Positions 14,409 to 15,672 of a DNA stretch of 64,000 nt are shown piece by piece. The stretch covers positions 868,001 through 932,000 of the forward strand of contig JBNJNM010000013.1 in assembly GCA_052426225.1 (NCBI GenBank). The letters are read 5' to 3'. The translations under genes and the position numbers were made by a program. This DNA is from Zancudomyces culisetae HAW-14-8. Its lineage: Eukaryota; Fungi; Kickxellomycota. Position 1 is the stretch's first letter, and each line of letters starts with the position of its first letter. The notes under the pieces were generated by a model. It was not told the origin of the DNA. It did not search any database and saw only the letters and a list, made by a program, of their open reading frames with translations.

Positions 14409-14465
14409 TAGCCCGAAGGCTAACAATAATAATGCCCAGCTTGGAAATATACCAAAAGTTGGGCA
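14409..14465 (-). promoter_or_regulatory. Two stem-loops in the presumed HAC1 3' UTR
   Basis: mRNA sense UGCCCAACUU...AAGCUGGGCA (14465..14433) and UAGCC-UUCG-GGCUA (14422..14409, cUUCGg tetraloop). Confidence 0.45.
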
Positions 14466-14487: not shown

Positions 14488-15672
14488 TTAAAAGTTAAAT
14501 AACGGAGTCAAGTCCTGCAATGAAGCAGCTCCGCTCTCACTATTAAAAGTCGGGCCCAAATCTGGAACCCCGCCCGTGGCATTGATTAGTTCGAGTAGCT
14601 CGTTTTCAGAAACGGGCTCCAGTGCTCCAACTTGAGGAAGCAAGGGGTACAAATCTTTTTGTACACAGGTATTTGTTTCGAGGGAAACGCCATTTGTAAC
14701 GCAGGAGTTGATAAAATCCCAGTCTATTCCAGAATCACTCACATGTTTGGCAGGCACTAAAGGTTGAGCAACCTCTCCTCCTATACCCGAAAGCCCATCT
14801 ACCTCTAGTTTACTTTGCAGATGACCTTTATACAGCTCTTTAAGCAAAAAATCATTTAAGACGGAAACCTCTGCTGCTGAGAATTGTGTTGCTGATTAGA
14901 TGTAAACGCTTATGCGTATCTATTCTTATGCACACAACTGGGCGAGTACTGCTGACTCGCACAAGTCTCCGTTGATATAGCTATAAGTGCTGGATTCGGA
15001 ATCTGCTAGTGAACTAGAGCGTAGCGAACTTGAGCATACAGAAGATGGTCTCTCAACGCTATAGGGTGCCAACATGTGACTGTCTCCGATAAGACCTACA
15101 AATGTCTTTTCTGACTCTGTGTCTGTAAGACAAGAGCTATTATAACCTCCGGATATATCATCCTTTAGAATCCCTGCGCCTAAAGATTCTGCTTTGGTCC
15201 CACTCACCAATCCCATAATATTTTTCATGCATTTTTCCAGCTCCATCCTCCGGGCCTCCGACTTTTGATATAGATCAGCCAGCCGCTGATTCTCTTCAAC
15301 CAAGTATTTATTCTCCTCCTCTAAGCTCTTTGTAAGCACCTTTTTCTTCTCCCTAGATCGCTGAGCTGCTAGTCTGTTTCTCAGAGTTCGCGCCTTCTTT
15401 CTATTTAGCGATTCAATTTCGTCTATGGGCCCACCTTTCTTGACTGGTCTTCCTGAACGTAGCTTGCGTGAACTACCATCACTCAGGCCAGACGTAGTAC
15501 CCGGACTTTCATCCCCTGTGCTCAAATCCAGTTCATCAACTTTTCTCTTTCTGTCGACAATGGAAATGTTATCTTCATTTTCTGCCTTGAGTTCCTCTCC
15601 AGCCTTTTGTACCTGGGGCAAGACAGCACCAGAAGTTAAACCAATGCCATAACTCGATAAGATACTGTCCAT
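14488..15672 (-). CDS. HAC1: HAC1/XBP1-type UPR bZIP transcription factor; unspliced 248 aa (15672..14926), IRE1-spliced 369 aa (15672..14952 + 14876..14488)
   Basis: Basic region RKKARTLRNRLAAQRSREKKK plus leucine zipper. ESA(V/A) junction peptide like XBP1 ESAA. Two CNG'CAGN hairpins; splicing fuses the two same-frame ORFs. Confidence 0.9.
14877..14951 (-). other. Unconventional (IRE1-cleaved) 75-nt intron
   Basis: 5' hairpin GCGAGT-[CAG^CAGT]-ACTCGC (14960..14942); 3' hairpin TTCT-[CAG^CAGC]-AGAG (14883..14869); basal stem GGAGACTT/AGGTTTCC; contains in-frame TAA, TAG, TAA. Confidence 0.88.

What the first reader, a model, noticed from the sequence alone, without database searches (positions are those of the whole stretch)
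14863..14970. IRE1-type unconventional intron of unusual design (75 nt, frame-preserving, stop-removing) in a HAC1/XBP1 gene
Seen: on the minus strand the bZIP ORF (15672..14926) and an ATG-less acidic ORF (14847..14488) share one frame, separated by TAA, TAG and TAA. A perfect 6-bp hairpin GCGAGT-CAGCAGT-ACTCGC and a second hairpin TTCT-CAGCAGC-AGAG each show a 7-nt CNG'CAGN loop. Flanking exon sequences GGAGACTT (14970-14963) and AGGTTTCC (14870-14863) can pair. Cutting after each CAG removes 14951..14877 and gives ...LCESA-AEVSVLNDFLLKELYKG..., 369 aa. Known: IRE1 cuts such loops; XBP1 and filamentous-fungal hacA introns are about 20-26 nt and shift frame, whereas the S. cerevisiae HAC1 intron is 252 nt and contains a stop. 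Inference: an intermediate-length, yeast-like stop-removal switch with an XBP1-like ESAA junction in an early-diverging fungus; standard gene callers would truncate this gene.
Basis: partly seen in the sequence, partly recalled or inferred. Interest (0 to 1): 0.9.

Follow-up and report, generated by a model that had tools for sequence, protein, structure and literature searches.

The report
IRE1-spliced HAC1 intron in gut fungus
The stress-response gene HAC1 of the mosquito-gut fungus Zancudomyces culisetae very probably carries a 75-base intron cut by the stress sensor IRE1 rather than by the spliceosome; this is a new example of a well-known switch, and public gene models get it wrong.

Summary
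On the minus strand a 248-aa bZIP ORF ends just after a 6-bp hairpin with loop CAGCAGT. A second small hairpin with loop CAGCAGC lies 75 nt downstream. Cutting after each CAG joins a 128-codon acidic ORF that contains no ATG.

The window is Zancudomyces culisetae (Harpellales). The same two sites occur in five other Harpellales species, with introns of 65, 90, 93, 100 and 125 nt. They also occur in Coemansia (53 nt) and Massospora (41 nt). In every case the split codon is G|CA and the exon-2 frame it implies is open. Intron lengths cover all three classes mod 3.

No GT-AG pair is conserved, and the public gene models disagree with each other. The genome encodes an IRE1 kinase-RNase and a Trl1-type ligase.

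No RNA data could be obtained, so splicing itself is inferred.

The "unusual design" is overstated. Frame preservation is a species accident. HAC1 introns of 19-848 nt are known, and the yeast intron also carries the stop codon. I found no 5'UTR-intron pairing like that of yeast.

Verdict: real, a new member of a known kind, moderate interest. The scan's other notes on this stretch concern this same DNA.

The parts
14952..15672 (-). HAC1 exon 1: ATG at 15672, bZIP domain, ends ...GDLCES plus the first base (G14952) of the split Ala codon
   Evidence: ORF; Pfam bZIP_2 7e-07 and bZIP_Maf; 98% identical to the NCBI Z. culisetae bZIP protein P0001; single copy in the genome
14942..14960 (-). 5' splice-site hairpin: 6-bp stem GCGAGT/ACTCGC, 7-nt loop CAGCAGT (14954..14948), predicted cut between G14952 and C14951
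   Evidence: 23 consecutive invariant columns across 6 Harpellales species. The stem changes seen are only G-C to G-U. A similar hairpin is present in Coemansia and Massospora
14877..14951 (-). Predicted IRE1-excised intron, 75 nt. It encodes the 8-aa Hac1u tail AVLAQLCA and carries stops TAA 14928-14926, TAG 14922-14920 and TAA 14898-14896
   Evidence: The homologous introns are 65-125 nt in Harpellales, 53 nt in Coemansia and 41 nt in Massospora
14934..14938 (-). 5' strand (GUUGU) of the inner helix that closes the variable intron body; it pairs with 14887..14883
   Evidence: 96.7% of cells paired, one compensatory pair (columns 52-149, U-A to A-U)
14883..14887 (-). 3' strand (ACAAU) of the inner helix
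14869..14883 (-). 3' splice-site hairpin: stem (U)UCU/AGA(G), 7-nt loop CAGCAGC (14879..14873), predicted cut between G14877 and C14876
   Evidence: The core TCTCAGCAGC is invariant in 6 Harpellales species. The three inner pairs are 100% paired. The fourth pair is lost in S. mucronatum and S. culicis
14965..14972 (-). Exon-1 strand of the exon-exon helix (ACGGAGAC), pairing with 14868..14861
   Evidence: one compensatory pair (columns 15-174, U-A to C-G). The helix is made of entirely different sequences in Coemansia (GGCAAGGGC/GCCCUUGCC) and in Massospora
14861..14868 (-). Exon-2 strand of the exon-exon helix (GUUUCCGU)
14488..14876 (-). HAC1 exon 2: CA completes the Ala codon, followed by 128 codons (AEVSVLNDFL...PLFNF) and stop TAA 14490-14488. 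It is acidic, has no Met, and is the presumed activation domain
   Evidence: The matching ORF is open for 115-178 codons in the other Harpellales species, in the frame set by the junction. Short shared motifs are seen. No Pfam family matches

Best explanation
This is the HAC1 orthologue of Zancudomyces culisetae (Harpellales, Kickxellomycotina). Its mRNA carries a 75-nt unconventional intron (14951..14877, minus strand). The unspliced mRNA encodes a 248-aa bZIP protein that ends in the intron-encoded tail AVLAQLCA. Under ER stress the genome's IRE1 kinase-RNase would cut 3' of the G at loop position 3 in both 7-nt loops (CAG|CAGU and CAG|CAGC). The two loops are held side by side by an exon-exon helix and by an inner helix that closes the intron body. 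A Trl1-type RNA ligase would then join the exons. The result would be a 369-aa protein in which the 8-aa tail is replaced by a 129-aa acidic C-terminus, presumably the activation domain.

Shown here: the sequence anatomy, its conservation, the open reading frames and the presence of the enzymes. Inferred: cleavage, ligation, dependence on stress and the function of exon 2.
For: 1. Anatomy is as described. It is the only CNGCNGN twin-hairpin pair in 128 kb of window sequence counted over both strands.

2. The same two sites occur in S. megazygosporum, Furculomyces boomerangus / S. angustum, S. mucronatum, S. simulii and S. culicis, with introns of 125, 93, 65, 100 and 90 nt. They also occur in Coemansia sp. 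(53 nt) and Massospora cicadina (41 nt). The split codon is always G|CA, and exon 2 is open for 54-178 codons in exactly the frame the junction implies, across all three length classes mod 3.

3. The nucleotides around both sites are invariant: 23 consecutive columns at the 5' site, and TCTCAGCAGC plus GTTTCC at the 3' site. By contrast the proteins are only 36-42% identical in exon 1 and about 20% identical in exon 2.

4. The four-helix model is 97-98% paired. All stem changes are pair-preserving and two are compensatory. The exon-exon helix is rebuilt from different sequences in Coemansia and Massospora. The model lies within 0.7-4.9 kcal/mol of the MFE in every species.

5. The genome encodes IRE1: a 1424-aa ORF with Pkinase and a C-terminal Ribonuc_2-5A domain. 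It also encodes a Trl1-type ligase. No RtcB was found.

6. After the Zoopagomycota orthologues, the nearest relatives by phmmer are plant bZIP60 proteins (so named by NCBI), the plant IRE1 target. They carry the same ESAVL motif.
Against: There is no RNA evidence. No RNA run was listed, and no assembly contig encoding ORF 1 is on record. No Rfam family matched the region. The 3' hairpin is weak, at 3-4 bp. Covariation within Harpellales is thin because the sites hardly vary: 2 compensatory pairs, and 33 of 500 shuffles reach the observed score. In Z. culisetae, in-frame GT-AG alternatives exist on paper.
Confidence: 0.85

Rival explanations
1. The stops are removed by a conventional spliceosomal intron. 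The public Z. culisetae model P0001 (380 aa) uses a 42-nt GT-AG intron, 14933..14892 (GTGCAT...TCAG). Under this reading the longer protein is made constitutively, without IRE1.
For: P0001 is an annotated NCBI protein. A script found four in-frame GT-AG options in Z. culisetae, of 42, 57, 60 and 81 nt.
Against: The GTGCAT donor is absent at the aligned position in all other species. The public models of the relatives each use a different junction or none at all. The one GT-AG pair shared by Z. culisetae and S. megazygosporum (GTACTC ... GAG|GTT) loses its AG in S. mucronatum and S. culicis, where it reads GAT. Five introns inferred from actin-family exon boundaries in this genome begin GTAAGT (three), GTATGG and GTAGTT, end in TAG, and look about 65-150 nt long. 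That is unlike a 42-nt GTGCAT...CAG intron, though the sample is small. This rival also leaves unexplained the invariant twin CAGCAG loops and the helices.
Confidence: 0.07
2. There is no splicing. The gene is simply a 248-aa bZIP protein, and the downstream ORF is either a separate gene or non-coding. Callers treated S. megazygosporum this way (265 aa plus a separate 122-aa gene) and S. mucronatum likewise (235 aa).
For: Public annotation of two relatives.
Against: The Z. culisetae downstream ORF of 128 codons has no Met codon at all. At roughly 0.066 stops per codon for this base composition (my estimate), 136 open codons would be expected by chance about once in 10,000. The ORF is kept open in six species, always in the frame fixed by the CAG|CAG junction, although its genomic frame relative to exon 1 differs between species.
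Confidence: 0.04
3. The twin hairpins are IRE1 cleavage sites used for decay of the mRNA (RIDD-like) and not for productive ligation.
For: The sites fit the IRE1 loop consensus. Nothing here shows ligation.
Against: Decay would not need the conserved exon-2 ORF, its junction-defined frame or the exon-exon helix. A Trl1-type ligase is present.
Confidence: 0.03

Closest known systems
Saccharomyces cerevisiae HAC1 intron (252 nt)
   Same: It is cut by Ire1 at two stem-loops and joined by tRNA ligase Trl1. Its length is a multiple of three and the stop of the unspliced form lies inside the intron. A short intron-encoded tail (10 aa in yeast, 8 aa here) is replaced by an exon-2-encoded activation segment (PMC6627864). 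This genome has a Trl1-type ligase, and no RtcB was found.
   Different: The intron here is 75 nt, not 252 nt. Exon 2 encodes 128 aa, not 18. No 5'UTR-intron pairing above shuffled controls was found, so the yeast translational block is not supported. The 3'UTR hairpins of Z. culisetae are not conserved in relatives, so there is no sign of a conserved element like the yeast 3' bipartite element.
Cryptococcus neoformans HXL1 (56-nt unconventional intron; PMC3154848)
   Same: It has an intermediate-length intron with CAG at both borders and typical stem-loops. No 5'UTR pairing was detected there either. It is experimentally spliced in an Ire1-dependent way.
   Different: It is a basidiomycete gene with a very divergent bZIP. 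Splicing of the gene here has not been shown experimentally.
Metazoan XBP1 (26 nt) and plant bZIP60 (23 nt)
   Same: All have twin 7-nt loops with three conserved bases each (PMC4891664). The 5' hairpin is read in the same phase, giving E-S-A. The plant bZIP60 hits carry ESAVL. Human XBP1 reads AESAA at the junction, but I recall that from memory and did not test it here.
   Different: Those introns are short, always shift the frame and contain no stop. In animals the ligase is RtcB, which was not found in this genome.
Long HAC1 introns of the CTG-Ser1 clade (152-848 nt; PMC6222058)
   Same: They show that intron length drifts widely while the two boundary hairpins are kept, and that annotation pipelines miss or mis-model the intron.
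   Different: They belong to Saccharomycotina. The series here (41, 53, 65-125 nt) lies in Zoopagomycota lineages, for which my searches of the held library returned no report of a HAC1 intron.

Membership tests
IRE1-spliced bZIP mRNAs (HAC1 / XBP1 / bZIP60 / HXL1) | bZIP DNA-binding domain encoded upstream of the unconventional intron | tested here: met
   Pfam bZIP_2 (7e-07, above the cut-off) and bZIP_Maf at residues 83-142 of the 248-aa ORF
IRE1-spliced bZIP mRNAs (HAC1 / XBP1 / bZIP60 / HXL1) | Two stem-loops with 7-nt loops carrying C at -3, G at -1 and G at +3 around each cut | tested here: met
   The loops are CAG|CAGU and CAG|CAGC. This is the only such pair in the window. They are conserved in 8 further loci
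IRE1-spliced bZIP mRNAs (HAC1 / XBP1 / bZIP60 / HXL1) | Excision replaces the C-terminus by joining a second ORF in frame | tested here: met
   The split codon is G|CA. Exon 2 is open for 128 codons here and for 54-178 codons in relatives, whatever the intron length mod 3
IRE1-spliced bZIP mRNAs (HAC1 / XBP1 / bZIP60 / HXL1) | Base pairing that holds the two cleavage loops together | tested here: met
   The exon-exon and inner helices are 94-97% paired with two compensatory changes. The exon-exon helix is rebuilt from other sequences in Coemansia and Massospora
IRE1-spliced bZIP mRNAs (HAC1 / XBP1 / bZIP60 / HXL1) | IRE1 (kinase plus KEN/RNase) encoded in the same genome | tested here: met
   G000 C15: a 1424-aa ORF with Pkinase (1e-34) and Ribonuc_2-5A (6e-28) at the C-terminus
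IRE1-spliced bZIP mRNAs (HAC1 / XBP1 / bZIP60 / HXL1) | RNA ligase able to join the 2',3'-cyclic phosphate and 5'-OH ends | tested here: met
   A Trl1-type ORF of 982 aa matches RNA_lig_T4_1 (7e-65) and tRNA_lig_CPD (6e-11) on C19 and C21. No RtcB match was found
IRE1-spliced bZIP mRNAs (HAC1 / XBP1 / bZIP60 / HXL1) | ER-stress- and IRE1-dependent excision seen in RNA | not testable with these tools
   No RNA run was listed and no transcript contig was found.
IRE1-spliced bZIP mRNAs (HAC1 / XBP1 / bZIP60 / HXL1) | Match to a curated RNA family model | tested here: inconclusive
   Rfam 15 gave only a chance-level HSUR hit on the other strand. I do not know whether Rfam holds a model of this intron
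S. cerevisiae-type HAC1 translational attenuation | Long-range pairing between the intron and the 5' UTR | tested here: not met
   The duplex energy of the intron against the 200 nt upstream of the ATG is no better than shuffles in Z. culisetae (z = +0.5) and in 4 of 5 relatives. The transcription start site is unknown

The most novel reading that the evidence does not exclude
Harpellales HAC1 may be a distinct architectural variant of the IRE1 switch. In this reading the two cleavage loops sit on a four-helix junction, and the inner helix closes a freely evolving insert. A stop fixed exactly 8 codons after the 5' cut has freed intron length from any frame constraint, giving 65-125 nt in all three phases among close relatives. 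No 5'UTR pairing is detectable, so the unspliced mRNA may be translated into a bZIP protein without an activation domain. Its conserved tail AVL[AV]QL.. could serve as a degron or repressor signal, which would be XBP1u-like logic inside a yeast-like stop-in-intron layout.
Probability: 0.25. Interest if true: 0.55.

Novelty: new member of a known kind. Interest (0 to 1): 0.45.

Why it matters
It extends the IRE1-HAC1 unconventional splicing switch to insect-gut fungi and their Zoopagomycota relatives. My searches of the held library returned no paper describing a HAC1 intron in these lineages.

It gives a graded natural series of intron lengths (41, 53, 65, 75, 90, 93, 100, 125 nt) with conserved cleavage loops and helices. 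Such a series is useful for asking what IRE1 and the ligase really require.

It shows that seven public genome annotations mis-model this key stress regulator, by truncation, by an orphan downstream gene or by invented GT-AG introns. It also gives an exact junction to test in Z. culisetae, for which a transcriptome already exists.

Tried and rejected
- RNA evidence: the look-up of sequencing runs listed no run, so read laying could not be used. Exact look-ups of the 248-aa ORF of both strains found no assembly contig.
- Rfam: no relevant hit.
- Yeast-like 5'UTR-intron pairing: not above shuffles. The first attempt timed out.
- 3'UTR hairpins as a conserved targeting element: they are stable in Z. 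culisetae (z = -2.7) but absent in five relatives.
- Hexamer enrichment in the window as a way to derive the 5' splice-site consensus: uninformative. I replaced it with five introns inferred from actin-family exon boundaries.
- Hooks and Griffiths-Jones 2011, the main survey of this intron, is not held in the library. I could therefore not check whether it covered any zygomycete.
- A literature search call failed on a term that was too short.
- A search of metatranscriptomes for the junction was left out for the same reason. In one search a script joined candidate exons only to test reading frames.
- 'no verdict' items: none; complex prediction was not used.

Full report
**What is there.** Read on the minus strand, an ATG at 15672 opens a 248-codon ORF that ends at TAA 14928-14926. 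Pfam places a bZIP domain at residues 83-142. Just before the stop lies GCGAGT-CAGCAGT-ACTCGC (14960..14942). Seventy-five bases further on lies (T)TCT-CAGCAGC-AGA(G) (14883..14869). The frame downstream is open from 14895 to the stop at 14490-14488 and has no Met codon. Cutting after the G at loop position 3 in each loop removes 14951..14877. That joins ...GDLCES, a split Ala codon (G|CA) and AEVSVLNDFL..., 369 aa in all. Over both strands of the window this is the only pair of CNGCNGN loops closed by 4 or more base pairs and lying 15-300 nt apart. The region folds better than 199 of 200 shuffles.

**Whose gene.** The ORF is 98% identical to a Zancudomyces culisetae bZIP protein. The window is contig 13 of a 27-Mb, 25-contig assembly, which fits the 2025 HiFi assembly of this mosquito-gut fungus (PMC12611240). 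The lineage is Harpellales, Kickxellomycotina. The gene is single copy. A full HMMER search found five Harpellales relatives first. Next came plant proteins, several of which NCBI names bZIP60, the plant IRE1 target, together with Coemansia and Massospora proteins.

**The decisive comparison.** I fetched the loci of the relatives. All carry the same two sites. The table gives the intron lengths counted from CAG| to CAG|.

| Species | Intron length (nt) |
|---|---|
| Massospora cicadina | 41 |
| Coemansia sp. RSA 2320 | 53 |
| Smittium mucronatum | 65 |
| Z. culisetae | 75 |
| S. culicis | 90 |
| Furculomyces boomerangus and S. angustum | 93 |
| S. simulii | 100 |
| S. megazygosporum | 125 |

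In every locus the split codon is G|CA. In every locus the exon-2 frame implied by that junction is open: 115-178 codons in Harpellales, 100 in Coemansia and 54 in Massospora. The Harpellales lengths fall in all three classes mod 3, so exon 2 sits in different genomic frames in different species, and only this junction restores the frame in all of them.

Around the sites the DNA is invariant: 23 consecutive columns at the 5' site, then CAGTTG; at the 3' site CAA, TCTCAGCAGC and GTTTCC. By contrast the proteins are 36-42% identical in exon 1 and about 20% in exon 2, and the intron body does not align. That pattern indicates selection on the RNA.

**Structure.** A four-helix model consists of an exon-exon helix, the 5' hairpin, an inner helix closing the intron body, and the 3' hairpin.
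- It is 97-98% paired over the six distinct Harpellales sequences, against 38-60% when partners are slid by 1-3 columns.
- The variable stem positions are all pair-preserving (G-C to G-U, U-A to U-G).
- Two pairs show compensatory changes: columns 15-174 in the exon-exon helix and columns 52-149 in the inner helix.
- Within the order the statistics are modest, because so little varies: 33 of 500 shuffles reach the observed score.
- Between clades the exon-exon helix is rebuilt from unrelated sequences. It is GGAGAC/GUUUCC in Harpellales, GGCAAGGGC/GCCCUUGCC in Coemansia and CAACGGUUUC/GGAAGCCGUUG in Massospora.
- With both loops forced open, the model lies 0.7-4.9 kcal/mol above the MFE in each species.
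In two species it is U-U, and that U more plausibly pairs with G14938 in the inner helix.

**Enzymes.** Contig 15 encodes a 1424-aa ORF with a protein kinase domain and a C-terminal Ribonuc_2-5A domain, which is the IRE1 architecture. A 982-aa Trl1-type ligase, with T4-like ligase and CPD domains, is present. No RtcB was found. This is the fungal enzyme set (PMC6627864).

**Rivals.**
- *Conventional intron.* The earlier NCBI model of this gene (380 aa) bridges the stops with a 42-nt GT-AG intron, 14933..14892. Its donor is absent from the aligned position in every relative. The models of the relatives each do something different. Two truncate, one of them with an orphan 122-aa gene downstream. 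Three use other junctions, one of which deletes the GDLCES region. The single GT-AG pair shared by Z. culisetae and S. megazygosporum lacks its AG in S. mucronatum and S. culicis. Five introns inferred from actin-family exon boundaries in this genome start GTAAGT (three), GTATGG or GTAGTT, end in TAG and look longer than 42 nt. That is a small sample.
- *Two separate genes.* This fails because exon 2 has no Met codon.

**What is not supported.** Frame preservation is an accident of this species. Intermediate length is not new: HXL1 is 56 nt and experimentally spliced (PMC3154848), and Saccharomycotina span 19-848 nt (PMC6222058). A stop inside an intron whose length is a multiple of three is the S. 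cerevisiae layout (PMC6627864). Unlike in yeast, I found no intron-5'UTR pairing above shuffles, so the unspliced mRNA may well be translated. In Harpellales its tail is always 8 aa, AVL[AV]QL[CYR][AS]. Most of those codons are also the 3' strand of hairpin 1 and the 5' strand of the inner helix, so protein-level selection on the tail cannot be separated from selection on the RNA. In Coemansia and Massospora the intron has no stop, and the unspliced frame runs on for 220 and 121 codons, the XBP1-like frameshift type.

**Limits.** No RNA data were reachable. Cleavage, ligation and stress dependence are therefore inferred from established knowledge of the pathway. The joined sequence was not sent to any search tool; exons were searched separately by reference.

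**Verdict.** This is a real and well-conserved IRE1-type HAC1 intron. It is a new member of a known kind in a lineage for which my searches of the held library returned no report of one. Confidence is 0.85 and interest is moderate.

Noticed in passing
L002 4001-5310; L003 3001-4185; L008 2501-3799; L010 2501-3208; L011 2501-3683; L012 2501-3793; L013 1501-2976: The public gene models of HAC1 in seven Zoopagomycota assemblies are mutually inconsistent. Two are truncated at the intron stop, one of them with an orphan 122-aa gene called downstream. Four are bridged by differing GT-AG introns. The Coemansia model is read straight through the intron into the wrong exon-2 frame (491 aa).
   Followed up: yes
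window 14409-14465 (minus strand, 3' UTR): Two stable hairpins lie just after the HAC1 stop, one of them UAGCC-UUCG-GGCUA. The first 108 nt after the stop fold with z = -2.7. The first 120 nt after the stop show no comparable structure in five relatives, so these are not a conserved targeting element.
   Followed up: yes
G000 C19:22292-76505 and C21:2330975-2394159: The Trl1-type ligase and an actin-family gene give identical scores on contigs 19 and 21. Their spacing differs by about 9 kb. This looks like a segmental duplication or an uncollapsed haplotig of more than 50 kb.
   Followed up: no
L016 960-1010 (Logan contig of SRR22100207): A 1.4-kb contig with a sequencing adapter at its end, from an unidentified organism (52% GC), encodes a 381-aa bZIP protein. 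It reads ...RDSAAEVEF... over GACTCAGCAGCCGAAG, which looks like an already spliced HAC1-type junction. I did not pursue it, because neither the genome nor the organism is known.
   Followed up: partly
L013 2308-2380; L014 2087-2135: Coemansia and Massospora HAC1 introns (53 and 41 nt) contain no stop and shift the frame. The stop-in-intron layout therefore appears to be specific to Harpellales among the Zoopagomycota sampled here.
   Followed up: partly
G000 C14:329758-331039: The best actin match in the genome shows in-frame TAG codons inside the HMM matches (1 and 2 TAG). This is probably because the matches run into short introns. I did not examine it further.
   Followed up: no
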